From: Styela clava
Taxonomy: Eukaryota
Reading direction: 5' to 3'
DNA: 64,000 bases
Assembly: GCF_964204865.1 (NCBI RefSeq)
Contig: NC_135262.1
Location: 15,190,001 to 15,254,000 of the forward strand
Every line of letters begins with the position of its first letter. Position 1 is the stretch's first letter. This document shows positions 27,301 to 54,357 of this stretch, in pieces. The notes beneath the pieces were generated by a model. That model was given only the letters and a program-made list of their open reading frames with translations. It ran no database searches and had not been told where the DNA came from. The position numbers were made by a program, and so were the translations under genes.

Positions 27301-30300
27301 TATGGATCGTTTTATTAAATTGTTGCTGTTATTTTTATTCTGTTGTGCTTTTCTCTTTAATTATTTGATCAAATGCTTCTTTCCAATGGTTAAAGATTGT
27401 TGTTGTCGCTAGAAGGCTGTGGCATTTGTTTTTCACTTTATTGTGTGTATTCAGTATTATTGAAAATTGCGCACCGTGTGGCGGTTCCGCGGTCGCATTT
27501 CAGCGATTTAGGGGTCAGCGGATTAGCTACTTGATGACAGGAAAGACTACGGCTAGTGAGAAAGATATGATTCTACTTTGTTTTGGTTTCGTGTCCATAC
27601 ATTTGAGCATTGCTCTCCTGCAATTCAGAATAATAATGGTATTCGGATTAATAAGCAAACCAATCATTCATGTTTTCATAAGTTCTATGTTAAGTTATGA
27701 GACTTTCCAAAAATAATCGAACGAAACTTTTTTCTACGTTAATTGTAATAGCTTCTAAAGTTTCCACACTCAGGTCACAGACAATTAATCAATTTTAATT
27801 TAGAAATACCTTTACTATAACATGGATGAACACTACAATTGTTCTAACATTCCCAATCACCCTGTAATCAGGAAACGGGTTAGTGGAAATGATCAATTAT
27901 GGTTTATGGAGAATTCCAACTCAAGCCATATTTGTTATTATTCGTTCTACGTTGCCGTAAGTTTATTCAACTTTTTATTAAAAGCCTGTGTATTCTAATT
28001 ATGAGCTGGGGTTACGCGAGACTACATACATACCTATGCTTCCTCTATGCCTTCATGCTATAGAGGATCAGTATAGAGCAAGGGTACTTTAGCATGAATA
28101 AACATGACTTTACTACGCAATTCAAGTGCCCTGCTGCACACTAACGTTTTCTGGGACGTTTCGTCTGACGAAAGTCAGACTACCTCAGACAAGCATTTTA
28201 CAGCAAATACATTCTACAGAATTACATTTGTGTTAGTGTGCAGCAGGACTCTTGAATTGCCTGTGTATTGTGTTGCATTATCTCATTCTTTCATTTTTGC
28301 TTTGCGATCGTATATATTCAGACGAAATGTAAACACCGTTCAATATTAAGGGGGTGCAGATCTTTGGCCACTTGTGAAGGGAACACAATGGGAAAGGGAA
28401 AGTTTTTAAAAGCTTTGTTTGGTTTGTAAACGATAATGTGGGCCGGATACATACAAAGTCTTTTTTGAAGATTTAAACCTTTGTTTCGCCGTAAAAACAA
28501 ACATAGTATATATCGCGATGTTTTATATTTTAGGTTTCATATACGACATGAATATATTTTCCACATTTGACGAGTGGGTATGGCAATTTCCAAAATAAAT
28601 CTATTAGTAATGATGGAATTCTATCAAATTAATAAAAAGACTTTACCGCGTCTTTTGAATAGCTGATGATCTGCGCATAAGAACGGTTGATGACAACATC
28701 ACATATTCCTGTACTGTGGCCTTGAAGTAAACATATTGGTTTAGCTTCAACGTATGGATTCCAAATTCTCACAAAATGATCCAGACTACCCGTAACCAAA
28801 ACGTTTAGACTCTTGCTGTAGTCAAAACATTCTACCCCCTGAAATAAATAAATTTCTTTGTAAATGTCAGCTTGTCCAATTAGAATCTAGTTCCGTTAAA
28901 AAAAACAAGTGCAGTGTGACAATGGGTTGTTTTTATATTAGATTTGTGAATGGTCGATCAAGTGATTGATAAACGTATGGATTCGAGTCATTCACGCTAG
29001 TGCAAAATTTTCTATTGTTTATATATATTGTCACAGTTCTGTTTCAACGCTCATAATTTGCGCAAGTTTTAAAATTTTCTTATTTGTTGCAGAAATAAAA
29101 CGAAATCTTTTTCATTTTTAAAAAAGATTGAACAAGGCAAGCGTATAAAGGCATATTATTACCTTATTTACTTTGTAGATATATGTCTTCTTTTTCTTTT
29201 TCAAGTCCATGAGAACCACGGATGTGCTTGACGACACTGATGACGAAATGATGACGTCACCGTCAGCTACGTACATCACTCTTCGAATAACTTCTTCATG
29301 AATATTGGGAATAAACTCATATGTAACATATCGTTTGTGTTCCTTTATATCCTTGAGTGAAAACGGACTTTTATTCAGAAATGATTCTATTGCATTGATT
29401 ATTTGCTTGACTATCCTCCAATAATATTAAGGTACGTAACAATTACAATATAAAAGAATAATACATACTCACATTGAAATATACTCTTTGTGTCCCTTGT
29501 TGCGGACTGAATGGTTTTTCAAAAAGTCTGGATTGCGGGAAATGAAAATGAAGAATATGGACAGATCCAGTGTCATCACCAAATAATAGCATTGAATGTG
29601 AATTTGTTGCATTTTCGGCATACCAGAAATTAACACAGTTGGGAACATCTGGCAACGCTGTTCCAAGAATAGTTTTTAGATGTAAAAAGAGAATTAATTT
29701 GTGCAACCAAAAAGAAGAAGAACTGAATTGCCGATGTAATTTTTTTTAAACCGCATTCGAAATAGTACACTTGAGTTTTAAACACGTAGTTTTTTAATTG
29801 TCGTTTTTAGTTTTTTTTTTTTTTTCTATAAATATTTGATAAATGCTGAGTGGCAACTCAAACACAATAATTATTTGTAAAAGACCTTATTTTATATCCA
29901 CCAATATGGTATTTAAGGCATTTTTACTCAGTGTCTATCAAGCAAGCTGATCGATCGCTAACAGTTACGTAATAGAAAATTATATCAGCATTTCGTCAAA
30001 CCTCAAATGCAATCTCGAGGCAAGGTTTCAATCCACCGCCTTACATATCGGTATCATAAACCGATTGTTTATGCTCAAAATTAGCCTTACCATACAAGCA
30101 GAATTCTGCGTAGTAAGTTGCGGTTGAAGTATCATAAAAATAGATTTCTCGGCTAGTTGTAGTCAGGGCAAATTTTTGTGCGTTTCTCATATAGACTCCA
30201 TCAGTCACCCACGTATGGCAACGACGCCGTGAAACTGCATCGTCAGCGCTGAAATTCGATCCAAGTTTGTAATTCTACAAAAGCAAAACATATTTGTAAA

Positions 30301-36990: not shown

Positions 36991-37128
36991 TCCTACGTTT
37001 GTTAATAAGGAAAACAATTTTTGTCAATCACAAGAGCGAGACGGATAAGATGTAGAGCATCCTACGTTTGTTAATAAGGAGAACAATTTTTGTCAATCAC
37101 AAGAGCGAAACGGATAAGATGTAGAGCA
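36991..37128. repeat. 69-bp tandem duplication (2 copies)
   Basis: tcctacgtttg...gatgtagagca at 36991-37059 and 37060-37128, with 2 mismatches. Confidence 0.95.
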
Positions 37129-37576
37129 TACTTGTCAAGAACATGACAGGGAGATTGCTAATGTGTTTCGCCCTTGGGCGCATCTGTTACTCAAACCATT
37201 CTGTTAACAATTATCTTCTTGATGGTTATGCCGGTGACAGCCACGCAAGGGTACACTGTTAAAAGTAATAAGATAAATTCTCATCAATACAAAAAAAACT
37301 GAAAACATATTTCAAGTTTTCAAATCGCGCCATACACGATACCTTTGTTTTTTTTCAAATCTTGCCAGTTGTTGGCCGTAGATGTATCGTGATACATAGT
37401 TGGTCTGTAATGAACCATGTGAAGCATAATGAGAAAAAAGTAGTATTTTTCTCGTTGAAGCTACGTATGAAAATTTTTGATTGTTAGCCCGGGGTTATGT
37501 TCCTTTTTGATATACTAATGTTACACTGAAACTTTTGCATTCGAATTTGGGTATCGTACATGAACGGAGAGCAAAA

Positions 37577-40500
37577 ATGAAAGTACTCTTGCTTGCTGCT
37601 GCACTTTTATTTTCTTCGGCTTATGCTGATGGTAAGTAACGTGGACGATATATAAGCAAGTACATGTGCTTGAGGGAAGGAATTTTACTTGTCAGCAATT
37701 ACACATATGTAAAAATATTGCTCGTACATGTCTGTCATTTGAATTATTCATGTTAATGGTGGAAATTCATTCTGAATATAAAATATGATTTGCTGAATCT
37801 TTCCAGTCAGAGTAACAAATATTGATGCATTATCAATCTAAACATCGTTTTTTTGTGAAGCAAAATACCCTATTAATTTTTTTAAGAGTGCGATGAGACC
37901 GCCGAATGCAATACTGGAGAAATATGCTACGAATTTGAACCAGCCTTAAAAGAGGGAGTTTGCTCTTGCCCGGGAGGTTATACAGGAGATGAATGCAAAA
38001 CAAGTAAGTAGATTTTTCAAGTCCATAAGTCTTTATTTTTTAAAATCTAGAATTATCGTATCAACCAGCATTTAGTTTTCGCGGATTGGATTCTTCCTAA
38101 TAACATTATTATCAAGTTCATTTACAGCAAATCACCTGCGACTTTAGTATGAACTGTGTTTTTTCTCAACACCTTGACCAAAGATTTCATACCAACTGTA
38201 CTTCTAGTTCTTGGGTATTAATTTAAGTGAGCCCATTCATAATTTTTTTTTGTATTGGTGATTTGCAAATGAACAGTATCTATCAGAAAGAAAACCCTTT
38301 TAATATGAAATAAAATGTATGAATAATGTTGGTAGTATATTAATTGAAGCATTTAGCATCGAATATTGTAACCTTTTGGAATTAATTATCCTATTCTCCC
38401 TAAAATTTTTGCTTTGCAGTCGACGAAAGTAGGTACGTAGACAGCACGTGCCCTTTGCCAAAAACATCAAAATTTCCGTCACTATGTACAGTCATTGATG
38501 GATGCGCTATTGACAATAGTTGCGATTCTGATGAAATTTGTTGCTCAAATGAAAACGGATGTGGTTCTGTATGCAAAAAGAAAGGTATGTAAACAGGGTT
38601 ATTAATGTTTTTTAATCACAGGAAAATGTATCACGAAGCTAGAAAAATTTAGATATTTTCAACCTAGATCTAAAAAAAATTCTTTTAATGTTAATTTTCG
38701 ATATCATTCAAAATATTTATACTGTATTGCAATAATATTTATATAATTGAAACGATTTAATGGGCTTAGTAATTGCTCGACAAAAGAAGCTTGAATGAAT
38801 TTGACAATAATTCATATTTGCAAATTGTCACAAACGATTTAATTATTATTTACATTAATTAAAAAATTTTAATATTCTATAACAAACAACTTAAGTAGAC
38901 AAAGCTTCGTAAGTTGGATTCAATGTATTAAAATAAATAGTGGGTCTATTCTAAACTCCAAACATTCAAATAAAATAGTTAAGTACTGCATAGTGCCAGC
39001 AGATGAACCCTACAATATATTTTAGTAAAGAAAAAGCAGTCTTTAGAAATGATTAACTGAAAGTAGCCTAACATATATAAAGTAAAAATGATTGATAAAA
39101 CAAATATACAATGTATCATTTTTTCTACAAGAGTGACGAAATGCCAATGAAACAGTAAAATATTGTTTTTATATGGTTTAAATCTATTAATCGTGCAATT
39201 ATCGTGCACTATACCTACATAAACGGGATGGTTATGAATACATTAATGAGGTTTCTAAATAGGTATTTTTTTTATTGTTTTTAAGTCAAGATTAATTAGG
39301 GAACACGTTGAAACTGATGTCGTTCGGTACTTGGCGTAGACACCCCAAGGGCAAAACGATTTAGCGACAGTCGCGTACTGGTACTGGGTTCCATTGTAGT
39401 ACAAGTACGTAAATATGTTTGTCCTCGTCCGTTCAAAAAGTAATACAATATAAATAAGGAAGTCTAAGTCAATTCAAAGTGCCATACTGCTACAGGTATA
39501 AGGTGCTACGAGAATTCAATTGTAAAAGATAAAATTTATTTAAAAAATATATTAGTTTTACAGTGACTACATTTACAATTAATTATTCGTAGTATATGTT
39601 AGAAATAACCGCCCAAAACAACGACAAATCCTCGATAAAATGATTTTCTCGTAAGAAGCAAATTCTTGTACAATAAACCGGATATGTTTTTTTGTTTATA
39701 TATTATACAAAACAATTTTACTCTTGAAATTTTTCATCGTAACGGATACCTTGGTACCAGACACCGCCGAGAACATCTTGATACAGAACGCGCATATTCG
39801 AAATTTCTTATCGCATTTTCATCTATGTGAGTCCCGTCCGTGTCAGTCAGACGACATCACTAAATTCGTAAAATGCCTTGAAACTTGAAACCGTTTTTCG
39901 AACTTTTTTCCTTTCGATATGAACAAAAAAGAATACAGATAATAAAATTAGTTATAAACTTAAGGCTCCTTACTTCTAAGAACGAAAAACCAACAGAGTT
40001 ATCTGCGTTTACGTTATCTGTGTTTTGAATCGAAGCATACACTCTATGTGAAACACAGTAAGGGTTTTATATCATGTTCAGGTGTTTTCCTATATCTTAG
40101 ATTTTTTCGATGACGTTGTATTTCCGTTATACTTTTTTTTCATTTTTGGATTTCCAATCCTTTGCAATTAATTCAAGCTTTATTAGCACTCATTGTAAAA
40201 TAATGATCTACTTTGCAGTAGGGTAATAAATAATATTTTTTGTCGTATTTTGTAAATAATGTTTGGTATCTTCAAAAATTCAAATCATATAAATTAAATA
40301 AGAAGTCACACAATTTAACACAGAACTCAAACGTTCTAACTAACTCAATTTTAATTGTTCTTGCCTAGATTGTTCCGTTGAAGCCAACAAAAAGTCGTGC
40401 ACAGACCAGAATAAATTGTGCATAAATGACGCGGATGATGGATTCAGATGTGCTTGTGCATCCGGATACGCGGGCGATGATTGTAAAGATAGTAAGTTGA

Positions 40501-42630
40501 TTCATGTTTAATCTTTTTTTTTTTTTTAAATGAAATTATGTCATGTTTCTGTAATTGGATAATTATCAAATCCTTTATTGTTGTCGCGATTTGATAAAGT
40601 AATTAAATAATTAAAATTGGTCATTAAACTGTTCCAAAAGTTATAAAACTATTTGCAATAGGTATAGTTATTACCAACGTTTTCTCTCCCTATATGTGAA
40701 TGATTTCAATACGATAACCTCTTTTTGTTTATTTTTGTAACTTGCAACTTAAAACTTAAGGAGCGATGATTGACGAGATGTGCGAATACCCTGATATAAT
40801 GGAGACTTGTGAAGCAATTGAACCAGGCTGCACGGCTACTAGTCAATGTGATGACGGAAAAATATGTTGTTCAACTGGTTGCGGCACAGAATGTGTGGAT
40901 AAATCAACGGATCCTCCCAAAAAAGGGCGTACGTAGATAAATGCTATTCATACAAATAATTCCTTGTTTGTTAATTTTTTTCCGTGGATAGAATTTTTTT
41001 GTAAAAATATGTAGTGCAGATTGTTCAACATATATACGCATAGATCGCCAACTGACGCTTAGTATATCTCAGTTATATTAAAGTGTCATTATTTGTTCAT
41101 TTTTATAACATTATGTAGTAATATGAAACGGTTGTGGTATTATGAATATTGTTATAGATAGAAATCATAAAAGAAGAAGCAGTTTCAATATAACCAATCT
41201 TTTGTGGCAATTTTCCTAATGTTTCGAATTATTTTTTCATTCTTATTTCAGTATAAATGTCTTAGCATGAAAAGCTGCTGTGTTGGTTTTATTTGGAAAT
41301 AGTCTGAATGAAAGATGTTTAATGGAGTTGTCAATTTCAAAAACGTTGATGCAGATCACTTCAATATCATTGTCTAACTTAGACGCATACTTAAAAACCA
41401 TAGAATTAATACACTCCTAACTATTTCAACATATAGGCATCTCGTACATCAACTACAACATATACATCAACTACTTTTATAAATTTAGATGACGGATAAC
41501 TTTTTAATTTTATTTTATAGTTGATTTTGGGCTGGTCTTTCTATTATCTATGCTTGGTGGCAACAGCGGCGGTGGCAGCGGCGGACTCTTTTCTTCCGGA
41601 GGAAAAAAATGTGGACATTGTCCAGATTATTGTAGCGCGAGAAGTCACATATGTCATGGCAATCTTCTTGCAAAATGTGAAAATATTTGCGGACAGTTTT
41701 GTGATTTTGCCTTTAAAGATTACCATCACGAAGCTAAATACGTAACAAAATCGTGTAAGTTTACTGTTTTTTGTTTCAGTTTGCTGTAAAAAATATGGTG
41801 CCGGCCTCTTTTTGCTTATTTACGATATCAGTAATTTTTATTGTAATCTGGAACTGGATAGAAGTATAAAGGAACACCTTTCGCCGCTGACATATGGCTA
41901 ATGAAATTATTTGCTGACAAGGTGCGCCTTCCTCAAAATATGCATGATATAATGGCGTCTTAGCTGTGGGCGTATTGTGACATATATACAAAATTCTATA
42001 AATTTTTAATTGGATATGCTATGTTTTGTCTATACCAGGTGTTTGCCCCGCCGATCGACCACCTGCCAATGTTAGATGCGATCAAGAAATTAGCTATTGC
42101 ATGCAATACGAATGTGGATATCTTCATTGTCGGGTGAGTAGGTGCGGAGGATGTACAGTTGGTTGGTACGACGACAATTGGACTCAACAACAATGCCCTC
42201 AAACACGTAAGTATTTAAAAATGAAAATAAAAGAAAAATTTAGAGACTTGACTCAAAAGACTTGGAATTCTTATTTTTTTAACAATTTTACATAACTTTA
42301 TTATAGATTATTCACCCTCAATTATTAGGGAATGTCACAGTAGAAGACCAACATGCAAAAGCCAAAAAAAAAAAAAATTTCCCAGCTTCATATCCTAAAT
42401 ATTTCCTTTTCGGCCTCATTTGGTTAAAAAATAGGAAAAAGGCATAGCCTTTCATAGATTTCACAATAAAATCGGAATGCCAAGTTGACAGAGAACACAA
42501 TAGGCAAACCAGCATTTGAACATCATTGCATATTGTTATGTATATATTTTTTTCAATAGGATCACGAAGTTTCAATAGGGGTCACGAAGGTGGTCAAGGT
42601 GGTTTGTTCGGTAATCTCTTCGGCAAATAA
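37577..42630 (+). CDS. Secreted EGF-WAP-EGF-WAP plus 2x 8-Cys-module protein (paralogue A), 366 aa, 8 exons
   Basis: Exons: 37577-37631 (signal peptide MKVLLLAAALLFSSAYA), 37887-38003 (EGF, CSCPGGYTGDEC), 38420-38584 (WAP, C..DEICC...GCGSVC), 40369-40491 (EGF, FRCACASGYAGDDC), 40761-40928 (WAP, CDDGKICCSTGCGTEC), 41521-41754, 42039-42206 (CRVSRCGGC) and 42560-42630. All introns are phase 1 GT-AG and the frame is open (1101 nt). Confidence 0.9.
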
Positions 42631-44274
42631 ACAGCAGAAATTGAATTGCACAAAAGAATTAAACGCTCTTTTTTATAAGAGAGTCTTTGTACGGCATATA
42701 CTTTTTCAAAACTTTTTCGAAATTTCATTCTTACTACAAAGCCTTTAAATACGCAAGATTTGGAAGACTGTCGTATTTTCCGACTGAGAAAATTTGGATA
42801 ACAATACAGAGCATCTTTAAGTTTTTGTCTAATGTAGAAAAATTCACTAATACTCCGACCTCGTTTATAACATAATAAAATATATTCTATATTGATCTTT
42901 GAATTTATAAATGTGTTACAAAATGTTATTTTGTATGTTTGTGATCGAGATAAGATATAGACAGTACATAACAGTCGTTCCCATCTTTACTAACCAAGCG
43001 GAGGAGAAACATCAATCAAAATAATCTTAAGGATCGGTAAAAAAAAATTGAAATAAATGGGAAATAGAAAATAACCTGTGTTTACCTAATATACTTTAAT
43101 GTTTTGACAAAACTCAACTGTGTTTCCGCTGGTACATAAACCATACTGAAATAAAATCGGTTAAATCATAGGCCCATCAAATATCAACGTAATGAAAAAC
43201 AAACGAAGTTCTAAAACTTATACGCTTCCACACACAACCATCTTCTATTTTTTCGACTTTGTCGGGGCTCTTGGAGCGTTTTTAAATAATACGACGCGTC
43301 CCGTTACTTTGCCAGTAATTAGGATACCATTCTCAGTTTTCTTCTTTTACTGTTTTGCTATATATAATATTTAGATTTTAGACATTTACGAGAATTACCA
43401 AACTGCTGTCGCAACGGGTCGGAACTTGGAAGGTTCGACTGCTTGTTGACCAAGATATCGTGGTGCAATCTATATCATCATTTCCAAACACCCAATTTAA
43501 CGATGAAAGGTAAATCACCTAACAAAAACACGGTCATTTGGTAACCAAACGGTTAAATTTGCAGAAAAAATATACAACAAATTCGATTAGCCAAAAAGAT
43601 CGAGTTATTCACGTGTGGATTGACAACAGTGAAGCTGGTGAGTGGGAACATGTATTAAGAAAATAGTTCAGAACTAAAAGGGTATCAATGATTCTGTCGG
43701 GAGGGTGAAAATATATATAATTGCAAGTAATAAGTGATGTTATCTACTCACTACTTATATACTCACACAAGTCGAAATTATTTATTTTCAAACAAAACTA
43801 TACCTGGGTCAAAAATTACCAATATACATAACTTTCAGATCTTTTTCCAACTTGAAAATTGTCAACCAATCTAAATCCGCAGTTTATGTTTTGGGGGTTC
43901 TCCTAACTTTCGATCGATAAGTCTTCGGTCTCGAACCGATATTCTCGTTGAGGTATTACCAGTTTGTAATAGCACCACATTCAAACGAGAGGGCGATTTT
44001 GGACTTTGATGCAATATGGGCGCTGAATGGAGATTTCAAAGGTTAAAATATAGCATATGGCATCTTATGATTAGTCAAATTTATAGCTTAGAAAGTGGAT
44101 TTATGATATCGTTTTAAAAAATGAAGAAAATGAACGCATTTCTGATGAGTGTTACGTCTTGGTGCTGATGAAATACCAAAAATACATGACTCTATTGCTT
44201 ATGGATTGTCGTAAAAGTTCCCAATCACACCTTCCTTACTCTTATTAGACGCACTACGAAAGTATTTAACGTTC

Positions 44275-44541
44275 AAACGAGAATATCGGTCGGGGACCGA
44301 AGACTTATCGATCGAAACTGCGGTTTCGATTCATGACTCTATAGTGACACTAATTGAGTAATAGCTCGCAAATTATACGACATAATTCACTCAAAACCAA
44401 TAGGCTTCTGGTCCGAGATATAATGAATGCACTTACAAAATTTGAAGCAGATTCAACCTCGCTTTCGTGAGATATCGGGTGCATCTAACAAACAGACATA
44501 TACCTATCAACATACTTACCGATCTCAAGATCGATAAGTAA
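44275..44541 (+). mobile_element. Helentron/DINE-like non-autonomous element
   Basis: 5' subterminal acttatcgatc and 3' gatcgataagt inverted repeats, a 3' hairpin tacttaccgatc-tcaa-gatcgataagta and an acagaca microrepeat. A second copy lies at 56460-56778 and an inverted 5' end at ~43905-43950. Confidence 0.6.
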
Positions 44542-44707
44542 CAATGCAGCCTGTATAAAGTGTTTAATTGGAAAGTTATTTGACAAGACTTTTAAAATAC
44601 GTTGCTAAACGTTTCGGGTCAAAGATCGCTGGAATGACCAAGTATCACTACCGCTTGTGTCATGGGTGGTCTAGATGTTGAGGACCGCGTGTAAATTGTA
44701 CAGTTGA

Positions 44708-47053
44708 TTAATAACTCTTCTTCCTAAGAAAGGACAAACTGAACATTGTATAAGCAATTATCGCCCAATAACTTTATTAAACGTGGACTATAAAATACTG
44801 AGCAAAACATTAACAAACCAAATGAGTAATGTAATCAAACAAAATTGATCTTGATCAAACTGGATTTATTAAGGGGAGAAATATAGGGGATAATATTCGT
44901 CTGATTTGTGATGTAATTGACCTAACTGTTGCTGAATCATTGCCTGGAGCTTTAATTTTTCTTGATTTACAAAAAGCGTATGATAGTGTGAAATGGGACT
45001 TCTTGTTCAAAATTCTTCATGTATTTGGATTTGATCTTAAATTCATAAAATGGGTTAAAATCCTTTATAAGGATATACAGTGTTGTGTCACAAACAATGG
45101 TCATATTTCAAATGATTTTGGAGTCCATAGTGGCTTAAAGCAAGGTGATTATTTCAGCTGTCTTACATTTTTACTGGTAATTGAAATTTTTGCAAACATG
45201 GTCAGGCAAAACCCCAAAATTGAACCCATAAAATGGAGGGATATTTCCATAAAAATTTCTATGCTTGCTGATGATGTGACTGTAATAACAAATGGATCAA
45301 AATCTAGTATTGATGCCCTTTTTCAGACTTCAAATATTTTTGGGACTATATCTGGGTGCAGAATTAATATAGCAAAATGCCAAGCAATGTATATTGGCAA
45401 TAAGATTGGAACCTCCCCGATTAGTAGTGAATATAATCTCAATTGGAACGATGAAATCAAAATATTGGGTGTTATTCTGTCAAACAAAATGGAGGGTTTA
45501 TACAGCAAAAATTTTCCACAAATATTAGACAAAGTCAAAAAGCTACCTCAGGTGTGGAAAACATGAAATTTGACGTTTTTGGGAAGGGTTTGCATTATTA
45601 AGTCTCTCATTTTACCCCAGATATTATACCATGACACTGTTTTACCAATTGACGTTCCTGAAAGTTTCTTATCTGAATTGAATAGAACTATATATGTATT
45701 TGTATGGGGTTCAACTTGGGAGCGGATCAAACGAAATACCTTGATTGGCCCCAAAGAAAAAGGGGGTATTAATATGATAGATATAAAAAAAATTTTTGTT
45801 GCCCAGAAAATGAAATACATTCAAACACTCTTGAATGAGGACGTTAACCCAGTGTGGAAATTGATTGAGATGGAAGTGCTTGACCAATACTGTTTTCAAG
45901 CAATGCTTGAAGGAAAATTGAGCTCAAATTCATATGTAGTGAAACATTTACCTTTAACATCCATACGAAATATATTGAAGAACTGGTATTTTTGTAAAAA
46001 TGTGCTTTTTGATTGGAAAATGTCAAATTTTGATCAACCTATATGGTACAACAAAAGTATTTCTTATGCCAGAAAACAATTTTTTATCAAGTCTTGGTAT
46101 GATCATGGTATAAAAGCAGTAAGACACTTAGCAAATGTGGGTAATCTGTTTACTTATAGAGAGTTGACTGAAAAATATAGCATGCAATATAGTGATGTAG
46201 AGTATGTAAATTATTATCGCATCACTGGAGTTTTACCTGACGATTGGTTATGCAATATTGGAAACTGTATTGATTCTAGTGTATTAAGTGACCCCGAGGA
46301 AAATGTATCTCATTTTATTTCTGAAACATTCGAGTCAGAAAAAGTAAATAAAAGTATCTATGAAGGTTGAAACTGATCAAATTTATATTCCCTGATAAAT
46401 CAAGGAAAAAATGGGCAGATCTTATTTTTTTAGAGAGTGATTTTAATTAGAATAAATTGTATATGGATATCTTTTATTGTACTATTGAAACTAAATTGCA
46501 ATCTTTTCATGTAAAAATGTTCCATGGTGCCATAGTACTGAACGATAGATTGTATAAATTTAAACTTGTTTCATCAGAGTCATGTGATTTCTGTCATTCA
46601 AATGTTGAAACTACCAGCTACCTTTTCTTTGAATGTATAATTGTTCAACAGTTTTGGGAAACACTAAACATGTGGATATACTCAAAAACAGGGATTAATT
46701 TTAACTTTTCAAAGAGAGATGGCTTGGTGGGATATAGTTATAATTTTTATAACAAATTGTGTAACTGTATACTTCTTGTTGCCCGGTTTTATCTATATCG
46801 TTGTAAGATACAGAAAAAGAAACCACTGTTTAATGTTTTTACCTCAGATCTGTATGAAGTGAGGGAAATTGAACGGATCATTGCATATAAAAATGGGAGA
46901 ATAAAGAAACATGATCAAAAATGGAAAATTTTATGATACATTTACTGATTATTTTATATGATGAATTGTGTATTGTCCATGATTAGTGATTGTTGTAGAT
47001 GTACCGATCAATTGTGTTTTATATATTAATAAATATATACAAAAAAAAAAAAA
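44708..47053 (+). mobile_element. 5'-truncated Tx1/L1-clade LINE (RT plus C-terminal Cys motif), disrupted
   Basis: Peptides LITLLPKKG, NYRPITLLNVDYKIL, DQTGFIKGRNIGDNIR, LDLQKAYDSV.W, GLKQGD, ADD and CDFC...ET..YLFFEC. AATAAA at ~47028, poly-A at 47041-47056. 15-bp TSD AAATTGTACAGTTGA (44693-44707 and 47054-47068). In-frame stop at 45564 and frameshifts near 44845 and 46370. Confidence 0.95.
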
Positions 47054-48821
47054 AAATTGTACAGTTGAATTTTCGATGAATCTCAACAAAGTGTGGATAG
47101 TCATACACGATAATACCCAGAGGTCGAAACAATTGTGATAACACTTCCACATCACTGGTTTTAAGCCAAAAAGTTGATAAGTTTTTCAACAGATTTTTTA
47201 AAGTACGCAGGTGTTAAACGTGTACCGTATTTATGCTCTTGATAATTGTGCAACTGAACGAGATATTCTGGAATATTAAAATGATTTTAACAATAAATTA
47301 TATATATATATTCGACTGCATAAAAATGAACGGAGCTACCATGAAACGATTCTACTAACTTTTATTTGTGAGAAAGATACAGATTTTTTATAAAACAAAA
47401 TATTAGCAGTTGCTAAGAATAATTAAAAATATATAAAAGTATTTTGCATGAACATGCAAATTTGAAAATTGATTTGCTTTAGTTTGTATTCTAACAGAAA
47501 AAATAAAAATTAGAGTTACAGTGTTCACGAATTTAATTTTGGAGTAGGTTTCATTACTGGTAATCTTGAACTTGACAAAATTAATCTGAAAAAGGGGCAA
47601 ACTCGACCATTTTTAGACCACATTTTAGCTTATCATTTTCATAAAAGGACGCAGTAATCACCGTTCTTCACCTCATACCAAAATTATTGCTTCATATTAC
47701 GAACCTAACCCATCACCATTATCTTGCCATGTAGTTTAACACCTTGGACTCAAGTTTCTTTTTAGGTGATATCTGATAGCAGACCCGGTAAATATTTTAT
47801 AAATTCTTTTTAAACTAACTGATAAGTAGTAATTTATTTTTCATTGAGTTTCTTTTTGATATGAGTAGATCTTTGTAACCTTCTTTTGAGTATGTATATA
47901 TTACCGTTTACGAATAACTTTCGATTAGATATCCTTCCACGGTATGTAACATTTTTTTATCGAGGTTCAACGAGTGGAAATATGGAAATATCAATACCGG
48001 TCATCTACATTATAATATCATAGTGCGACCTCACTTGGAGTTAATGAATAATATCTGTCTCTGTTACAGGTTTATCATTTGGAACGTTCCTTCTTTTATT
48101 TATACAAGGTCCGAATTCAATATGCTTCCAATGATAGTTGTGTAAAAATAAATTCGTAGTGCGATTCAGCTACGATTCATCAGTTTGAAATTGAGATTAA
48201 TATATTGTTCCAATCGCCATTTAAATTGCGTCCTCAACTCAGAGTACGTTGTACTATCTTAAAATTAATATGTCGTTTTTTGAAGAACTACCAGATTTAA
48301 AGGGAATTTTTTGTTGTTTATGTATTTAATCATGATTTATTTTTACTCTTGGTTCTTTTGAGATGATTCCAGCAATGTCCCAGATACACCAATTTCTGCT
48401 GACAGAACGGCTGTTGGCTATCTCCATCACAGCCGTACATGCTACAGCTTGCGCATGATAGAAATGTGAAAGTAACAGTTCCATGAGACGCATTCGAGTT
48501 ATAGTGAAGCTAGTAAAAAAATTCTGTCAACTTTGCGTTTCATTCATACAAATACCAAAAATAGCGTCACCGTATTTTTTATTTATCAACGGCTGAGCTC
48601 GAGTCTTCAAAATTATGGTTCTAATTAATAACTTCCCCTAAAATCCGTTATGGGAATCTTTAGTTAGTGTTATTACAAGCGTTCAATCTGCCCTCCGGCA
48701 AATTCAACAGACAACTACTTCTGAGCGCTTCATTTCGGATAGGGAAAGGCTATTCTTGTGCATTGAATAACTGAATGAATAGTGTAGCGTCTTATTAGTT
48801 CTAGAAAGAAAAGGCACAATA

Positions 48822-51800
48822 ATGAAAACAAAAACGTATGCTGTTCTGTTGGTAGTTTTTTTGAACTTCGTAATGACTCGAGGTGCTGGTGACAGTAAGT
48901 ATTATCTTCCTTGGAAATAGTTCTGCTTTGGTTTGTTTTGTCACTTGCGAGACTTGTATAAGATTAATTGTATAGGTATAATGTGGTGTCAAGTAATTCT
49001 CATTCCTTCCTTGTGTACGCTTCAAAATTCACTATAAATTGAGGCATAGCAACCCAAATTTATGTGAATGAAAAAGCACCATTGAGTAAAAATGTAATTA
49101 CCGATCATAAAATGATTGGGACATTGGATAGACGTTGTTTTATATAAAACCAATCAAAACTTGATTTTGCTTTTTTGATTCATTATTTATGAGTTCGTGC
49201 ATTTACGAGACATGATTCGATTGTTTCTTTTCCAAACCATAATATTAATAGGAAGTGGCTTCTGCGTTCAATGTGTTCGTTTTATTATTTTTGTAGAATA
49301 TGCTGTATTCTGCCTAAATTTTTCATTGTCTCACTAACGAGCCTCATATTTGTGTTATGAAGTTTTCCTAAAGTTTTTTATTATTTTAACCAGTGGTGGG
49401 ATTCAAATTTGTTGTCAGTCGGTTCCATCACAAAAGTCATATTTTTAGTCGGTTCTGTTCCAAACATGACATTGACAACAACCAGAAATGCTAACCGGTT
49501 CGCTGATCTCATAAAATTCCGTGGGATTGTTCTATAGAACCGGTGTGAACCGTCTGAATCCCACTACTGATTTTAACCATACCTACACATTTACCTAATG
49601 TTGTATAATATATATATTTTTTATTAAAACTCAAGTTCATTTTCAGTTGGGGATTCATGCACCACATCAGATGATTGTTCAGGTAACAAGGTGTGCTATG
49701 ATCAAGGTGGCGATAAATGCTGCTTTTGCCCAATCGGATATAAAGGAGACGACTGTACAGAAGGTGAGAATATTATGCGAAAATGCGGTGTTGAAATATT
49801 AGGAAAAGTTTGCATAGTCAGGTTTGTGGCTTCAATATTGAAAAACCATGCCACAAGATTGCTTGAATCTGTGGAATAGCTACTTACTTCAGTTGTTTTT
49901 AAGATATTGTGACCTATTGTATACTAACCCCACCAATGTTACACATTGCAATTAAAACAACTTGGAACAACATGCCACCGTTGAGGTTTAAGATAAATTT
50001 ATGTATTGAAGTAAAATAAATGAGTAAAATAAAATAAGAGATTTATGTTTAAAAACGCCATTATAATTTCAGCTGACTTGGTGAATCCTGTCTGTCCATT
50101 TCCTACAAATCCTGTTGATGTCTGCTCTGTGCCACCAACGGGACAACCATGCGGGTTTGACAATTCTGACTGCCCGAACGATGGAATATGTTGTATATCA
50201 TCCAATGCATGCGGATCACAGTGCGTTTCATCTTCTGCAGGTATAAAATAATTGACATAAACTCGAGGTGGTTATGATGCGTAAAAGTGGGTAACTTGTG
50301 AGTAATTGGGTCCAAGTGGTTGATTTCTCCGCACCTCGTTTAAATCATATTTTTATACAGCTGGTTACGAATATATATCTAGACATATTGAAACTTAGTT
50401 GTAGCTTAAATGTAAAGTATTTTGTTCAGTTACATTGTATAACAAATTTATTAACAATATGGATGGAACAACACAAAGATTTTTCTTGAACTCTAAAACT
50501 TTAACTATTCTGTAGTATCCACTGCGATATCTAAACTTAGATGAAAAATATTTAGTTAGTCAGTGCCAGGAACAAAGATTTTTTATTTGACAGCGAAAGA
50601 GAATTTAGACAAACTTCGTGGTTACTATTATCAATTTATCTGGTTTTATTTTGGCTATCCCGATAGTTATCATGTCGTGGCTGAATTTTCTTCTCTGAAG
50701 TTATATTTTGTTGTACGGCAACCAGAAAATTGTCTAGTAACATCAAATATTATTCTAATAAGATATATTTATATTTTAACGCCTCAGGGTAGTGGATCCC
50801 GGTACCAGAATGCTCAGTCGGTAACAAGCACTGGCCGTGACGATCGTAGGAAATATGTAATTGATTTAGAAGTATAATTATCAGGATATTAAGCCCTGTC
50901 ACGACTTTTAATATGCTTGATATATGATATACGCGTACAAACATGATATAGACTTAACTTCCATAATCGTTCATACCTTGACTCTGAAGAGAAAGAAAAA
51001 AAAAATATTTTTGCAAATTCAACCCATATCCTATTTCACAGTAGCATTATTGCTGTATTCAAATTACAAACTGCAAGAAAAATGTTTATATGAAGTCAAA
51101 AATTCAATGTTTAGTTTTTTTTATATCATTCAACAGGACCATGGGATAGTTGTATAAATTTTACAAGACTCGGTACATATATGAATTGAAATTCAAGTCT
51201 CCTCGAACCACTAAAGTAGAACTACTTTTTTTTTATTTAGCGTAGCTCATTGGTTCTCAACCAGTGGGCCATGGCCCACTGCTTAGCCATAGAGACATTT
51301 TCAAGTGGGCCCCAAGTCTATTAAAAATTATTATGGTTATTGAAAAGTTTAGTTTCATTTGTGTCATTATAGTCAAATTTTGATGGTAGTAGCATTGAAT
51401 GATGCTGCTGCTTTTCATTCTAATTATTAAAGTGAAAGTATTTATTTTTGCAAAGAGAGTCTTGTTTTTCTTGTAGTTTTTTCCTTGCATGAGAAAGTTA
51501 GTGAGCCACAGAATTTTTATTTGAGCTAGCTATTTTGATAACAAATTTTTCATCCGTAATGTTACTGCAAATACTGCGAATCTGGTAAAAGACAAAATCA
51601 TGAATATATGTGTATACCGTATTTTTTCACCACTGAAATTGTAACCTTTCTCTTTATGAAAGGAAAAGAAAGTAAAAATTGATTGAAGTGAAGTATAAAC
51701 AAAACAATACTGATCTGTCACTTTTCATGTAGAATATCATCAAAATATTTTTGTTATAGGTTGTGGAAGTTCAGCAAATGTTAAAACATGTACTGATGAC

Positions 51801-54296
51801 AATAAATTATGTGTGAATGACGGATTATCGCCGAACGGATTTAGATGTGAATGCCCAGTTGGCTACACTGGTTCTGATTGTCGAACTCGTAAGTATGGAT
51901 TTCCCGTCGACTATATGTTTAAAAACATTACGTCGCCAGCGTGTCATTCGTGAGAAAGCTTCTCCTTACAATTTGATCGTTTGAATTTAATTTTAACTCG
52001 GGAAATCAGTTGTAAATAGCCAAATTAAATTATCGACGTCAAATGATCTATTAAGAAAGTATTATAATTATTTTTATGGTGTTCAAATCATGATTGCTTT
52101 GTCACATTTAGATAAAGCATAATGTCAGTTTTCTGCGCGTACAGAAATGGTATTCGAGAGTTTAGCATCTGAAGTGAGTAGAAAGTGAGAAATTCGAACA
52201 TAATAGGACTTTTCCTACATGAATTGCTAATTTTTTGTTATTTTTCATTGACCTTTATTGGGCTATTAGATACATATTACTAGTTTTCATCTGATTCAGA
52301 TGTTGCAAAACGTTTAAAACATACTGTGCTTTGTATGAATATGATTTTCCGATTTTTTTATTTTCCTTCATCTTACAATTCAAGATTACAATCATAATGC
52401 TTCTGTGGTTACACTATCATAAAATGTACAAATACCACATATGAGTGGGCACAATAAATTCATTAGAATTTGAAATCAAACAATCATTGCGCTTCACACC
52501 TTCCTAACATTTCCGACGTCACAAGTTTTTTCCCCTGTGCAGTAAGATGTGTTAACGAGCAATTACACTTACACTTACAACAGGACAAATGATCGACAAA
52601 AAATGCGATTATCCTAAAGTACCAAATAATGTTTGCGCCACATTAGAAGACCCCACTTGTACTGCAACTGCTGATTGTGATGATAAGAAAATATGCTGCT
52701 CAACAGGATGCGGAACAAAATGTGTTAGTAAGGGTAGGTAAATCAATCCAGCAAATTAAGATGTAAATAAATTACACAGCAAGCTTGTAGCTTTTTCTCG
52801 TTGAAAATTTCATTTGAGAAGTTATTACAAATGTGTGATACGTAATCCAATTATGAATAAATGGTGTTGAAGGGCTTAACGCTGAGCTAGCCTGTCGCTG
52901 ACGAACAACCCAAATGGAGTTAGAAGAACATATAGTATTATATCAGGCTAAAACGTTTTTTGTCTTTCTAGGAGGAATAGATTTCCAAACGCTTTTGTTG
53001 TTAAGTACTTTAATGAGCCAAAGACGTAGACCACCCGTTCAACCTCGCCCTCCAGTATGCCGCAGGAGGGTTTGCGGCCATATGTTATGTCCCAACAATC
53101 TTCGAGCAACTTGTAGACCACTGGGCGCTTGCGATGGCTATTTTATTGATCAATACTCTGGGAAGGATATAACAGCAAAGTGTAAGTATTATGTTGGAAA
53201 AAAGTTATTTAAGTATTCTAACTATTTTCACTCCGATCCGTCGATCTTCTTTATCGAACTTCTCTGATTTCTGAAAATCTCAAGAGACAAGTTACCGAAA
53301 TATATCAGATAATCCAAGAAGTGTGGTCAATATCGAATGATTTAGAGTAAGATGCTACTGGAAATTAAATAGGTAAAAAATATGCACGACTGCAATAGGC
53401 ATTACAAAACATGGCGGATGTAGACAGTTTCGTCTTTCAATCTATTCCATGTAGTGTACTCAGAAGTCCAAATCTCAACGGTTGTTTTTTCCTCATTGAA
53501 TTCTGTGTAATTTATTCTACAAAATCGCAAATATATTTTATAGGTTCATGTAGGAGAGGAGAACAAGAAATATCCACCTGCCCCCCAAATTTCTGTTACG
53601 ACGCTTCAGGTCGGCCACTAGTATGTTCCAATTATCCCACCGCTAGGTGTCGAGTTTCAAGATGCGGAAGATGTTACAGATATTGGATTCTTGACAATGA
53701 GAGAGAGGTAACCTGCGTTCAGAAGATGTCGTCATCAAGTGTTACCAGCAATGGTATGTATGGTAGTTAACACATTTGAGCATTTTTCAAATAATGGCTG
53801 TGCGGAATTTTCGAAAAGCAATTCGCCTGTGAAGTTTCATACATTTCAATAGAAAATATCTCACAAATGTTCGCGTAAATATGAAATTGAGAGATTCACA
53901 CTAATATAAGATTTAAACTTTGCACAAAGATCACAGTATGCTTGTGCAAAACTAAATTGATCTATGGATTATCAGAAAACACAATATATGAATGATACCA
54001 AGAAATTATTATGGCCGAATAATGCAAGTTTCAAATATTTGCAGAAGTTGAAAATTGCTTTTATCACTGTGACTTAAAAGTAATACAGTATTTTAGTCTT
54101 CTAACAGTTTTTCCTACATCTTTCAGTTTGTTTACCTGGTGAAAGAGTGATTCCTAATTGCCCTGATTTGTGTAGCAGAGTCTCCTGTCCGAACTACTCT
54201 GATGCAGTATGTACAGTGCATCCTTGCAACGGGTGTAGATATAAATTTACTAGACAGGGAATTGACGTAACGTCACAATGCCAGATCATTGGATAA
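48822..54296 (+). CDS. Secreted EGF-WAP-EGF-WAP plus 3x Cys-module protein (paralogue B), 408 aa, 8 exons
   Basis: Exons: 48822-48894 (signal peptide MKTKTYAVLLVVFLNFVMTRG), 49647-49763 (EGF), 50073-50240 (WAP), 51760-51888 (EGF, CTDDNKLCVND..GFRCEC), 52584-52733 (WAP, CDDKKICCSTGCGTKC), 52972-53181, 53544-53753 (CRVSRCGRC) and 54127-54296. All introns are phase 1 and the frame is open (1227 nt). Exons 1-7 match paralogue A exon for exon. Confidence 0.9.
49391..49569. mobile_element. hAT MITE, 179 bp, in intron 1 of paralogue B
   Basis: TIRs cagtggtgggattca...tgaatcccactactg; perfect 8-bp TSD ATTTTAAC; accggtt/cggttc subterminal repeats. Confidence 0.93.
51249..51530. mobile_element. Partial hAT-like element (left end)
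   Basis: cattggttctcaaccagtgggccatggcccactg resembles the CAGTGGTTCTCAA terminus seen at 18958. No intact right TIR. Confidence 0.45.
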
Positions 54297-54357
54297 CGAT
54301 TCAAGACAAAAAATCTTATTTAAAATTTTATTGACAAATATATATTATGTGTGATTT

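What the first reader, a model, noticed from the sequence alone, without database searches (positions are those of the whole stretch)
37577..54296. Tandem pair of secreted (EGF-WAP)2 proteins with an unfamiliar modular architecture
Seen: both genes encode signal peptide-EGF-WAP-EGF-WAP-hydrophobic motif-Cys modules, about one domain per symmetrical phase 1-1 exon. The second EGF-WAP pair is well conserved (CTD.NKLC.ND, CTAT..CDD.KICCSTGCGT.C) while the first pair and the C-terminal modules are strongly diverged. Established: WAP four-disulfide cores occur in protease inhibitors, antimicrobials and matrix proteins, and phase 1-1 exons mark exon shuffling. I do not recognise a characterised family with this layout. 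Inference: a lineage-specific secreted defence or extracellular-matrix system diversifying after duplication.
Basis: partly seen in the sequence, partly recalled or inferred. Interest (0 to 1): 0.75.

Follow-up and report, generated by a model that had tools for sequence, protein, structure and literature searches.

The report
Sea-squirt secreted EGF-WAP gene pair
Two neighbouring sea-squirt genes encode secreted proteins built from alternating EGF and WAP modules followed by an unnamed eight-cysteine module; they belong to a sizeable, uncharacterised gene family so far seen only in this species.

Summary
The window is from Styela clava. Gene 2 (48822-54296) is real. All 7 introns are removed at GT..AG sites in contigs of 2-4 of 4 runs. 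The chain equals RefSeq XP_039255261.2, "uncharacterized protein LOC120332145". Every internal exon is phase 1-1 and carries one module.

Gene 1 (37577-42206/42295) is intact and collinear with the family. It has no read test and no product in the protein collections.

Pfam confirms EGF and WAP. The C-terminal parts are 2-3 copies of an unnamed 8-cysteine module with no Pfam or PDB match. That module also occurs in starfish, sea-cucumber, snail and rotifer proteins.

The pair belongs to a family of at least 16 loci. All 8 protein clusters found are from S. clava.

The duplication is old, because synonymous sites are saturated. "Diversifying" therefore cannot be tested. Function is inferred: a secreted matrix or binding protein. 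A defence role is untested.

The scan also noted this architecture on another piece of this genome (s1-814279) and the module on this stretch (s1-810906).

The parts
37577..37631 (+). Gene 1 exon 1: start codon and signal-peptide-like N-terminus (MKVLLLAAALLFSSAYAD), donor G|GTAAG, phase 1
   Evidence: predicted only, no read test
37887..38003 (+). Gene 1 exon 2: EGF-like module 1 (6 Cys), 117 nt, phase 1-1
   Evidence: EGF_2 18.6 bits, below the 22.1 cut-off; family profile 21.0 bits
38420..38584 (+). Gene 1 exon 3: WAP module 1 (8 Cys), 165 nt, phase 1-1
   Evidence: WAP 23.6 bits, cut-off 20.8
40369..40491 (+). Gene 1 exon 4: EGF-like module 2, 123 nt, phase 1-1
   Evidence: EGF 22.8 bits, cut-off 21.5; 44.2 bits on the family profile
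40761..40928 (+). Gene 1 exon 5: WAP module 2, 168 nt, phase 1-1
   Evidence: WAP 23.7 bits; acceptor found (61.1 bits)
41521..41754 (+). Gene 1 exon 6: hydrophobic motif, Gly-rich spacer, then X module. X has 8 Cys counting the Cys codon split across the next intron.
   Evidence: weak but collinear match to the family profile (11.5 bits); no Pfam family
42039..42295 (+). Gene 1 last known exon: diverged C1 module (8 Cys, lacking the P-x-A-x-C loop). It ends either at the strong phase-1 donor after 42206 or by read-through to the stop at 42293-42295.
   Evidence: no further Cys-rich exon found in 42207-44900
44940..46936 (+). Intergenic remnant of a non-LTR retrotransposon (three consecutive ORFs). 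Not part of either gene.
   Evidence: (RVT_1 E 5e-21; zf-RVT E 3e-9)
48822..48894 (+). Gene 2 exon 1: start codon and signal-peptide-like N-terminus (MKTKTYAVLLVVFLNFVMTRGAGD), phase 1
   Evidence: joint 48894>49647 in 4 of 4 runs; N-terminus of P0001
49647..49763 (+). Gene 2 exon 2: EGF-like module 1 (7 Cys), 117 nt
   Evidence: joints in 4 of 4 runs on both sides; EGF 12.9 bits, below threshold
50073..50240 (+). Gene 2 exon 3: WAP module 1, 168 nt
   Evidence: (WAP 16.8 bits, below the 20.8 cut-off); WAP cysteine signature at P0001 71-114
51760..51888 (+). Gene 2 exon 4: EGF-like module 2, 129 nt
   Evidence: 3 of 4 and 2 of 4 runs; EGF 23.2 bits
52584..52733 (+). Gene 2 exon 5: WAP module 2, 150 nt
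   Evidence: (WAP 21.4 bits); weak alignment to elafin
52972..53181 (+). Gene 2 exon 6: hydrophobic motif, Arg/Pro-rich spacer, then X module (6 Cys counting the split Cys codon). X is a degenerate copy of the 8-Cys module.
   Evidence: hhalign X vs C1 probability 95.8%, E 7.3e-9; no Pfam family
53544..53753 (+). Gene 2 exon 7: C1, a full 8-Cys module
   Evidence: joint 53181>53544 in 4 of 4 runs; no Pfam or PDB match
54127..54296 (+). Gene 2 exon 8: C2, a second full 8-Cys module, and the TAA stop
   Evidence: joint 53753>54127 in 2 of 4 runs

Best explanation
Shown:
- These are two anciently duplicated paralogues of a Styela clava multigene family with at least 16 loci.
- Each gene encodes a mosaic protein of about 350-410 residues with 40-50 cysteines.
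- One module sits on each phase 1-1 exon, in this order: signal-peptide-like N-terminus, EGF, WAP, EGF, WAP, a short hydrophobic motif, a Pro/Arg-rich spacer (gene 2) or Gly-rich spacer (gene 1), then 2 copies (gene 1) or 3 copies (gene 2) of an unnamed 8-Cys module.
- Gene 2 is transcribed and spliced exactly so. It is very abundant in one study's runs.
- The EGF-WAP half is acidic and the tail is basic, in all 7 family proteins examined.

Inferred:
- The proteins are secreted.
- They act outside the cell as matrix-bound or matrix-building binding proteins of the larval/juvenile body covering. The rigid disulfide modules would serve as binding surfaces.
- The oppositely charged halves would favour head-to-tail or partner association.
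- Symmetrical exons let the number of EGF-WAP units vary between paralogues and isoforms.
- The WAP modules may additionally hold or block proteases.
For: Gene 2 is real:
- 7 of 7 introns are spliced at GT..AG sites in contigs of 2-4 of 4 runs. In X1, exon depth is 860-1100 against 2-10 on introns.
- The genome holds only one 100% copy of the C1 exon, so a retrocopy does not explain the joints.
- The chain equals RefSeq XP_039255261.2.

Modules:
- Pfam finds EGF and WAP.
- X is homologous to C1: hhalign 95.8%, against 0.4% or less for 5 control pairs.

Family:
- 30 WAP2-type and 21 C1-type matches in the genome. 15 are tight same-strand pairs 0.6-2.2 kb apart.
- All 8 protein clusters found are S. 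clava.
- Isoform P0036 is P0003 minus one 94-residue EGF-WAP block.

Charge:
- The N-terminal half has pI 4.1-4.3 and the C-terminal half pI 8.4-9.2, in 7 of 7 family proteins.

Matrix and larval context:
- The qPCR primers for 'fibropellin1' in PMC11988888 map to the paralogue on C8. The reverse primer matches exactly. The 3' 18 nt of the forward primer match exactly at the start of the C1 exon.
- The authors chose that gene as an 'extracellular matrix structural constituent' gene that is differentially expressed during tail regression (section 3.4 read).

The 8-Cys module elsewhere:
- It occurs in large secreted mosaic proteins alongside WAP, thyroglobulin-1, pacifastin and VWC modules.
- In a sea-cucumber protein, WAP at 232-269 is followed directly by the module at 287-327.
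Against: - No functional, localisation or tissue datum exists for either window gene. Run identities are coded, so the tissue or stage of the high-expressing study is unknown.
- The 'matrix' label in PMC11988888 rests on an automatic 'fibropellin' name. The direction of change for that gene was not in the text I read.
- Gene 1 has no transcript evidence. No product of it appears among the 8 clusters found. Its X and C1 modules score only 11.5 and 8.4 bits on the family profile.
The fold and binding mode of the 8-Cys module are therefore unknown.
- Signal peptides were judged by eye.
- WAP domains are classically protease inhibitors, so the rival reading is not excluded.
Confidence: 0.5

Rival explanations
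1. This is a defence system. The WAP modules are canonical-type serine-protease inhibitors or antimicrobial units, and the family expanded under pathogen pressure.
For: - 3 of 4 WAP exons pass Pfam's cut-off.
- WAP2 of gene 2 aligns weakly to elafin over the inhibitory-loop region, C-A-T-L against C-A-M-L (E about 2).
- The residue after the second Cys varies among paralogues: A, E, L, V, D. Such variation is typical of inhibitor families (recalled).
- The family sits in tandem clusters.
- The 8-Cys module co-occurs with pacifastin and thyroglobulin-1 inhibitor-type modules in a starfish protein.
Against: - The EGF-WAP half is strongly acidic (pI 4.1-4.3 in 7 of 7), unlike cationic antimicrobial WAPs (recalled).
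- The loop after Cys2 is acidic (E-F-E-x-P-T) in most paralogues.
- The match to elafin is not significant.
- No immune-challenge data exist.
- The one paralogue met in the literature is a larval metamorphosis-stage gene.
Confidence: 0.22
2. This is the Hemps family. The genes are Styela relatives of Hemps, the secreted larval protein of Herdmania that triggers metamorphosis. On this reading they act as diffusible or matrix-released signals at settlement.
For: [quoted passage not shown]
- Gene 2 has 4 N-terminal Cys modules and 3 C-terminal novel Cys modules.
- No Ciona protein was found in any search.
- Both animals are stolidobranch ascidians (recalled).
- A paralogue is a gene differentially expressed during S. 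clava tail regression.
Against: - No sequence comparison with Hemps was possible. The original papers are not held.
- The whole-library HMMER search with C1 gave only 9 hits. None of the 7 whose names I looked up is from Herdmania.
- Two of the four N-terminal modules here are WAP, not EGF.
Confidence: 0.25
3. Only gene 2 is functional. Gene 1 is a decaying or silent copy, so the 'pair' is one working gene plus a relic.
For: - No gene 1 product appears among the 8 clusters returned by the two family searches. Its predicted size (about 345-372 residues) lies within the length range those searches cover.
- Its X and C1 modules are the most diverged in the family (11.5 and 8.4 bits).
- Its C1 was not recovered in the genome search with gene 2's C1 at E <= 0.1.
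- Its 3' end is undefined.
Against: - All 7 exons are open, about 343 codons in a 33% G+C genome where stop codons are frequent.
- All splice sites are canonical and in phase 1.
- Both tail modules keep an even count of 8 Cys despite rearranged spacing.
- Synonymous sites are saturated. A copy that died long ago should carry stop codons.
Confidence: 0.25
4. The genes are Notch-pathway ligands or fibropellins, as earlier automatic RefSeq names suggest (jagged-2-like, fibropellin-1-like).
For: EGF-like modules are present. PDB sequence hits are Notch EGF repeats at E 0.003-0.2.
Against: - Pfam finds only EGF in P0001, with no DSL, MNNL or avidin-like domain.
- There is no transmembrane stretch, and only two EGFs, each separated by a WAP.
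- The Atlas structure search gives TM <= 0.30 to Delta/Notch clusters.
- RefSeq itself has renamed the product 'uncharacterized'.
Confidence: 0.02

Closest known systems
Hemps of the ascidian Herdmania momus/curvata (Eri et al. 1999; seen only as cited and described in a passage of PMC3760835)
   Same: Small secreted stolidobranch protein described as 4 EGF-like plus 3 novel cysteine-rich repeats. No Ciona orthologue. Tied to larval metamorphosis. Gene 2 has 4 + 3 cysteine modules, and a paralogue is a gene differentially expressed during tail regression.
   Different: No sequence comparison was possible. Two of the four N-terminal modules here are WAP. The family here has at least 16 loci, and no functional data exist.
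Mosaic proteins carrying the same unnamed 8-Cys module: Patiria miniata 'kielin/chordin-like' XP_038060050.1, Holothuria leucospilota 'WAP domain-containing' KAJ8046124.1, Littorina saxatilis KAK7090651.1, Rotaria sordida CAF1035266.1
   Same: They share the module C-x2-G-x-Q-x3-4-C-x3-4-C-x3-9-C-x2-P-x-A-x-C-x4-C-G-x-C-x-A-x-[WF]-x8-11-C. The sea-cucumber protein also has a WAP directly before a module.
   Different: These proteins are long arrays of 3-11 modules, combined with thyroglobulin-1, pacifastin and VWC modules or a transmembrane tail. None has the EGF-WAP alternation, the hydrophobic motif or the Pro-rich spacer. All are uncharacterised.
WAP four-disulfide-core proteins (elafin/SLPI, crustins, sea-star footprint proteins Sfp3/8/15 with WAP and antistasin; passages of PMC9382459)
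   Same: The WAP cysteine core (C-x5-C-x5-CC-x3-5-C-x3-4-C). All are secreted, disulfide-rich and modular. In sea-star adhesive the WAP modules sit in extracellular material.
   Different: Here the WAP modules alternate with EGF and lie in an acidic half. There are no Kunitz, antistasin or FnIII partners. Inhibitory or antimicrobial activity is untested.
Mollusc shell-matrix EGFL/EGFZP proteins (PMC9290575; abstract and passages read)
   Same: Secreted, tandemly duplicated genes with two EGF-like modules, each on its own exon. A lineage-specific expansion.
   Different: Their two EGFs are adjacent and are followed by a ZP or ZP-like domain, with no WAP. Here there is no ZP.
Ci-meta1 of Ciona (as described in a passage of PMC3760835)
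   Same: Secreted EGF-repeat protein expressed at the onset of ascidian metamorphosis.
   Different: It has 6 EGF-like plus 13 calcium-binding EGF repeats, with no WAP and no 8-Cys module. No Ciona protein matched this family.

Membership tests
WAP four-disulfide core (PF00095) | Eight cysteines with the core spacing C-x5-6-C-x5-CC-x3-5-C-x3-4-C | tested here: met
   All four WAP exons show it. The pattern scan finds it at P0001 71-114 and 170-209.
WAP four-disulfide core (PF00095) | Score at or above Pfam's gathering cut-off (20.8 bits) | tested here: met
   3 of 4 exons pass: 23.6, 23.7 and 21.4 bits. WAP1 of gene 2 scores 16.8 bits, below the cut-off.
WAP four-disulfide core (PF00095) | Protease-inhibitory or antimicrobial activity (a property of some members, not all) | not testable with these tools
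   Only a non-significant alignment to elafin (E about 2).
EGF-like domain (PF00008 and relatives) | Six-cysteine EGF pattern and the Pfam gathering score | tested here: met
   The second EGF of each gene scores 22.8 and 23.2 bits against 21.5. The first EGFs are below threshold (18.6 and 12.9 bits) but keep the pattern.
Mollusc EGFL/EGFZP shell-matrix proteins | Two adjacent EGF-like domains followed by a ZP or ZP-like domain (PMC9290575, passages) | tested here: not met
   No ZP family at E <= 1 in any exon or at E <= 0.01 in P0001. The EGFs are separated by WAP.
Jagged/Delta ligands, Notch, fibropellin (former RefSeq names) | DSL/MNNL domains with a transmembrane anchor, or long tandem EGF arrays with an avidin-like end (features recalled) | tested here: not met
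   Pfam finds only EGF in P0001 and only WAP or EGF-type hits in P0003 and P0005. Atlas TM <= 0.30.
Hemps (Herdmania) | Secreted; 4 EGF-like plus 3 novel cysteine-rich repeats (PMC3760835, passage) | tested here: inconclusive
   Gene 2 has 4 + 3 cysteine modules, but two of the four are WAP. Gene 1 has 4 + 2.
Hemps (Herdmania) | Significant sequence similarity to the Hemps protein | not testable with these tools
   The Hemps sequence could not be reached. No Herdmania protein is among the 7 named hits of 9.
Hemps (Herdmania) | No orthologue in Ciona; expression in the larval anterior/papillae | tested here: inconclusive
   No Ciona protein was found, which is consistent. The expression site was not tested. 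A paralogue is expressed in larvae at tail regression.
Unnamed 8-Cys module (echinoderm/mollusc/rotifer repeats) | Eight cysteines with P-x-A-x-C, C-x4-C-G-x-C and an aromatic pair | tested here: met
   - C1 and C2 of gene 2 align with 7 invariant Cys columns across 14 sequences from five phyla.
- phmmer E-values are 4e-11 to 5e-4 to the foreign proteins.
- X is a 6-Cys variant.
- Gene 1's C1 lacks the P-x-A-x-C loop.

The most novel reading that the evidence does not exclude
The family is the Styela counterpart of Hemps, the secreted settlement and metamorphosis factor of Herdmania. Hemps' '4 EGF-like + 3 novel cysteine-rich repeats' would then really be (EGF-WAP)2 plus three copies of an ancient, unnamed metazoan 8-Cys domain. 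In S. clava the gene has multiplied to at least 16 copies with variable module number. That would make the receptor, the matrix partners and the role of this signal in a major fouling invader directly testable in a species with a chromosome-level genome.
Probability: 0.25. Interest if true: 0.65.

Novelty: new variant of a known kind. Interest (0 to 1): 0.45.

Why it matters
If the reading holds, this is an abundant, lineage-restricted family of secreted proteins in an invasive fouling sea squirt. It is assembled by textbook exon shuffling from two common modules and one domain that no database names.

The 8-Cys module deserves a family definition. It spans deuterostomes and spiralians and accompanies inhibitor-type modules.

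The automatic names 'fibropellin', 'jagged' and 'notch' have already entered the literature for a paralogue (PMC11988888) and are misleading.

If the Hemps link is confirmed, a 25-year-old metamorphosis factor of unknown domain nature would gain a domain description, a gene family and a genomic context.

Tried and rejected
Ideas and searches that led nowhere:
- Mollusc shell EGFL/EGFZP proteins were my first recalled guess. I rejected them after reading PMC9290575: they have adjacent EGFs plus ZP and no WAP.
- The word search with a single 58-residue exon found nothing because of the length window. That says nothing about relatives.
- PDB sequence searches gave no credible match for the 8-Cys module. 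P0001 hit only Notch EGFs at E >= 0.003. P0008 gave nothing. The module profile A2 gave ferredoxin noise at E >= 0.31.
- Pfam on 14 module sequences gave nothing credible: IBR_1 in 2 of 14, best E 0.015.
- The Atlas gave no usable feature hit for P0008 or P0010, and structure TM <= 0.30.
- dN/dS for the pair was abandoned because pS is 0.68-0.86.
- A furin-site reading of the basic stretch after the hydrophobic motif was considered and dropped. The motif is not consistent across paralogues.
- A transmembrane reading of the hydrophobic motif was dropped. It has only about 9-11 hydrophobic residues.
- A search for a further Cys-rich exon of gene 1 in 42207-44900 found none.
- Literature searches found no paper on these genes: locus and accession names gave 0 papers. 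'Styela clava' + WAP and ascidian + 'whey acidic protein' gave only antimicrobial-peptide reviews and unrelated papers. 'Styela clava' + adhesive + EGF gave nothing relevant.
- Supplementary tables of PMC11988888 (lists of differentially expressed genes) might name the window genes. Supplements were closed and not seen.
- Sea-star Sfp6 ('kielin/chordin-like', PMC9382459 passage) may carry the module. This is untested.
- Rfam at gathering threshold found nothing in the window.

Full report
WHAT IS THERE

The window is contig C17:15190001-15254000 of a 377-Mb assembly. It is AT-rich, at 29-40% G+C per 2-kb window. A scan for stop-free, cysteine-rich stretches on both strands found two collinear series of such stretches on the + strand. 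These lie at 37886-42292 and 49628-54293, and the region between them holds no family exon.

Pfam, run exon by exon, calls the series EGF, WAP, EGF, WAP in both genes.
- WAP scores 23.6, 23.7, 16.8 and 21.4 bits against a cut-off of 20.8.
- The second EGFs score 22.8 and 23.2 bits against 21.5.
- The first EGFs are below threshold.
- The remaining exons have no family at E <= 1, apart from one noise hit.

GENE 2 IS PROVEN

Contigs of four runs were laid on 48800-54300. The runs are guessed to be RNA and come from four studies, one of them labelled as another organism. The contigs show seven GT..AG joints that define eight exons. The joints are seen in 4, 4, 3, 2, 2, 4 and 2 of the 4 runs.

In run X1 the exons have a mean word depth of about 860-1100 against 2-10 on the introns. 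The other three runs lie at about 3-5. The genome holds only one 100% copy of the C1 exon, so the joints are not explained by a retrocopy.

The first coding exon is 73 nt and the six internal exons are all multiples of 3, so every intron is phase 1.

A whole-library HMMER search with the C1 exon returned a 408-residue public protein, P0001. Its sequence is this exon chain, with the split codons filled in. The exon lengths sum to 1224 nt, which is 408 codons. P0001 is XP_039255261.2, 'uncharacterized protein LOC120332145 [Styela clava]', formerly 'protein jagged-2-like'. That fixes the species.

I made no joined sequence myself. The joined step was left out, and whole-protein work used this public record by id.

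GENE 1 IS PREDICTED

An ATG at 37577 opens MKVLLLAAALLFSSAYAD and is followed by a phase-1 GTAAG donor. Six further exons have canonical AG/GT sites in phase 1.

The exons map collinearly on a profile of the family: 21.0, 17.1, 44.2, 61.1, 11.5 and 8.4 bits. That profile includes gene 2's own protein, so gene 2's scores there are circular.

There is no stop or frameshift in about 343 codons. The 3' end is open. A strong phase-1 donor follows 42206, but no further cysteine-rich exon lies before 44900. Read-through would end the protein at 42293-42295.

I rate it as probably functional. Synonymous sites between the two genes are saturated, so a copy that died long ago should carry stops.

BETWEEN THE GENES

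Positions 44940-46936 hold three consecutive ORFs of a non-LTR retrotransposon remnant (RVT_1 E 5e-21, zf-RVT E 3e-9).

THE TAIL MODULES

The C1 and C2 exons of gene 2 each hold eight cysteines in this pattern: C-x2-G-x-Q-x3-4-C-x3-4-C-x3-9-C-x2-P-x-A-x-C-x4-C-G-x-C-x-A-x-[WF]-x8-11-C.

The cysteine part of exon 6 (X) is a six-cysteine variant of the same module. Profile-profile comparison gives 95.8% probability (E 7.3e-9) for X against C1, and 96.8% for X against a cross-phylum module alignment. Five control pairs among EGF2, WAP2, X and C1 give 0.4% or less. The last cysteine of X is a codon split by the X/C1 intron in both genes.

Gene 1's X keeps eight cysteines. Its C1 keeps eight but has lost the P-x-A-x-C loop.

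The module has no Pfam family and no PDB sequence relative.

In 1.84 billion representative proteins only 9 reach E <= 0.001.
- Three are Styela family members.
- Four are foreign proteins with 3-11 module copies: starfish Patiria miniata 'kielin/chordin-like', sea cucumber Holothuria leucospilota 'WAP domain-containing protein', snail Littorina saxatilis, and rotifer Rotaria sordida.
- Two look spurious by their sequences (P0004 and P0009). I did not look up their names.

The starfish protein also has thyroglobulin-1, pacifastin and VWC modules. The sea-cucumber protein has a WAP at 232-269 directly before a module at 287-327. The module is therefore old. The Styela novelty is its combination with EGF-WAP units.

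THE FAMILY

Genome searches found 30 matches to the WAP2 exon (E <= 0.01) and 21 to C1 (E <= 0.1). They lie mainly on C14 at 1.08-1.59 Mb and on C8 at 13.98-14.04 and 16.03-16.09 Mb. These counts are lower bounds.

22 of the 30 WAP-type matches have a C1-type match within 6 kb downstream on the same strand. 15 of them, gene 2 included, have it within 0.6-2.2 kb. With gene 1 that makes at least 16 loci.

Word-plus-HMM searches with P0001 and with a 7-protein alignment each returned the same 8 clusters, all from S. clava (8 of 935 and 8 of 2870 candidates). These searches need shared 5-residue words and cover lengths of 0.55-1.75 times the query. Few stolidobranch proteomes are public (my knowledge). 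So 'Styela-only' means 'not seen elsewhere yet'.

Members have two or three EGF-WAP units. P0036 is P0003 minus one contiguous 94-residue EGF-WAP block, as expected when symmetrical exons are skipped.

The closest relative of gene 1's WAP2 exon in the genome is gene 2's (61% identity, E 1.4e-12; the next best is 3.7e-9). The two are sister genes, but old ones, with pS 0.68-0.86.

WHAT IT MAY DO

In 7 of 7 family proteins the EGF-WAP half is acidic (pI 4.1-4.3) and the tail is basic (pI 8.4-9.2). A conserved hydrophobic motif and a Pro-rich or Gly-rich spacer join the two halves.

The only literature contact is indirect. The 'fibropellin1' qPCR primers in PMC11988888 (Table 1 passage and section 3.4 read) map to the C8 paralogue. 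The reverse primer matches exactly. The forward primer matches over its 3' 18 nt at the start of the C1 exon, so it spans the X/C1 junction. That gene was picked as an 'extracellular matrix structural constituent' gene differentially expressed in larvae treated with a TGF-beta inhibitor at tail regression. PMC9953650 (passages) mentions 'fibropellin' in the endostyle, but I could not tie it to this family.

From this I infer a secreted matrix-type binding protein. The classical WAP reading (protease inhibitor or antimicrobial) remains a rival. It is supported only by domain identity and a non-significant elafin alignment, and the acidity counts against it.

A LEAD

PMC3760835 (passage) describes Hemps of Herdmania. 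[quoted passage not shown] Gene 2's 4 + 3 modules, the absence of Ciona hits and the larval paralogue all fit.

No sequence test was possible. No Herdmania protein was among the named hits.

VERDICT

The genes are already modelled in RefSeq but uncharacterised and misnamed. The architecture is a new combination of known modules with an unnamed domain. Interest is moderate, and higher if the Hemps link holds.

Earlier scan notes agree on the repeated module (s1-810906). They also record the same architecture on another piece of this genome (s1-814279).

Noticed in passing
window 44940-46936 (+): Three consecutive ORFs (208, 266 and 159 aa) of a 5'-truncated non-LTR retrotransposon lie between the two genes (RVT_1 E 5e-21; zf-RVT E 3e-9).
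   Followed up: partly
window 49352-49535 and about 51250-51520 (introns 1 and 3 of gene 2): Many contigs 90-95% alike pile up here at very high summed depth in three runs, with loose ends on both sides. These are dispersed repeats that are transcribed elsewhere, not part of the gene.
   Followed up: no
window 48855-50172 and 52997-53628: Run X8 is labelled as a different organism (B), yet it holds two spliced contigs of gene 2 that are 99% or more alike. This points to a mislabelled or mixed sample, or a very close relative.
   Followed up: no
window 48835, 48845, 53700: Single-letter differences in the coding exons of gene 2 are carried by the high-depth contigs of run X1: C>A, T>A and A>G. 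They are probably allelic.
   Followed up: no
window 28117-28260: Another first-stage note sees a hammerhead ribozyme motif here. Rfam at gathering threshold finds no family anywhere in the window. I ran no permissive search.
   Followed up: partly
window 36991-37129: Two copies of a 69-bp tandem repeat, 97% alike, lie about 450 bp upstream of gene 1's start codon.
   Followed up: no
L004/L017 (G000:C8:16.083-16.086 Mb): The gene called 'fibropellin1' in PMC11988888 is a paralogue of this family, not a fibropellin. Its forward qPCR primer spans the X/C1 exon junction at the same split Cys codon as in the window genes.
   Followed up: yes
G000:C8:13985725-13986829 and 14034673-14035777: Two family loci about 49 kb apart have near-identical C1 exons (one residue apart in the printed stretch). 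This suggests a recent segmental duplication within the family.
   Followed up: no
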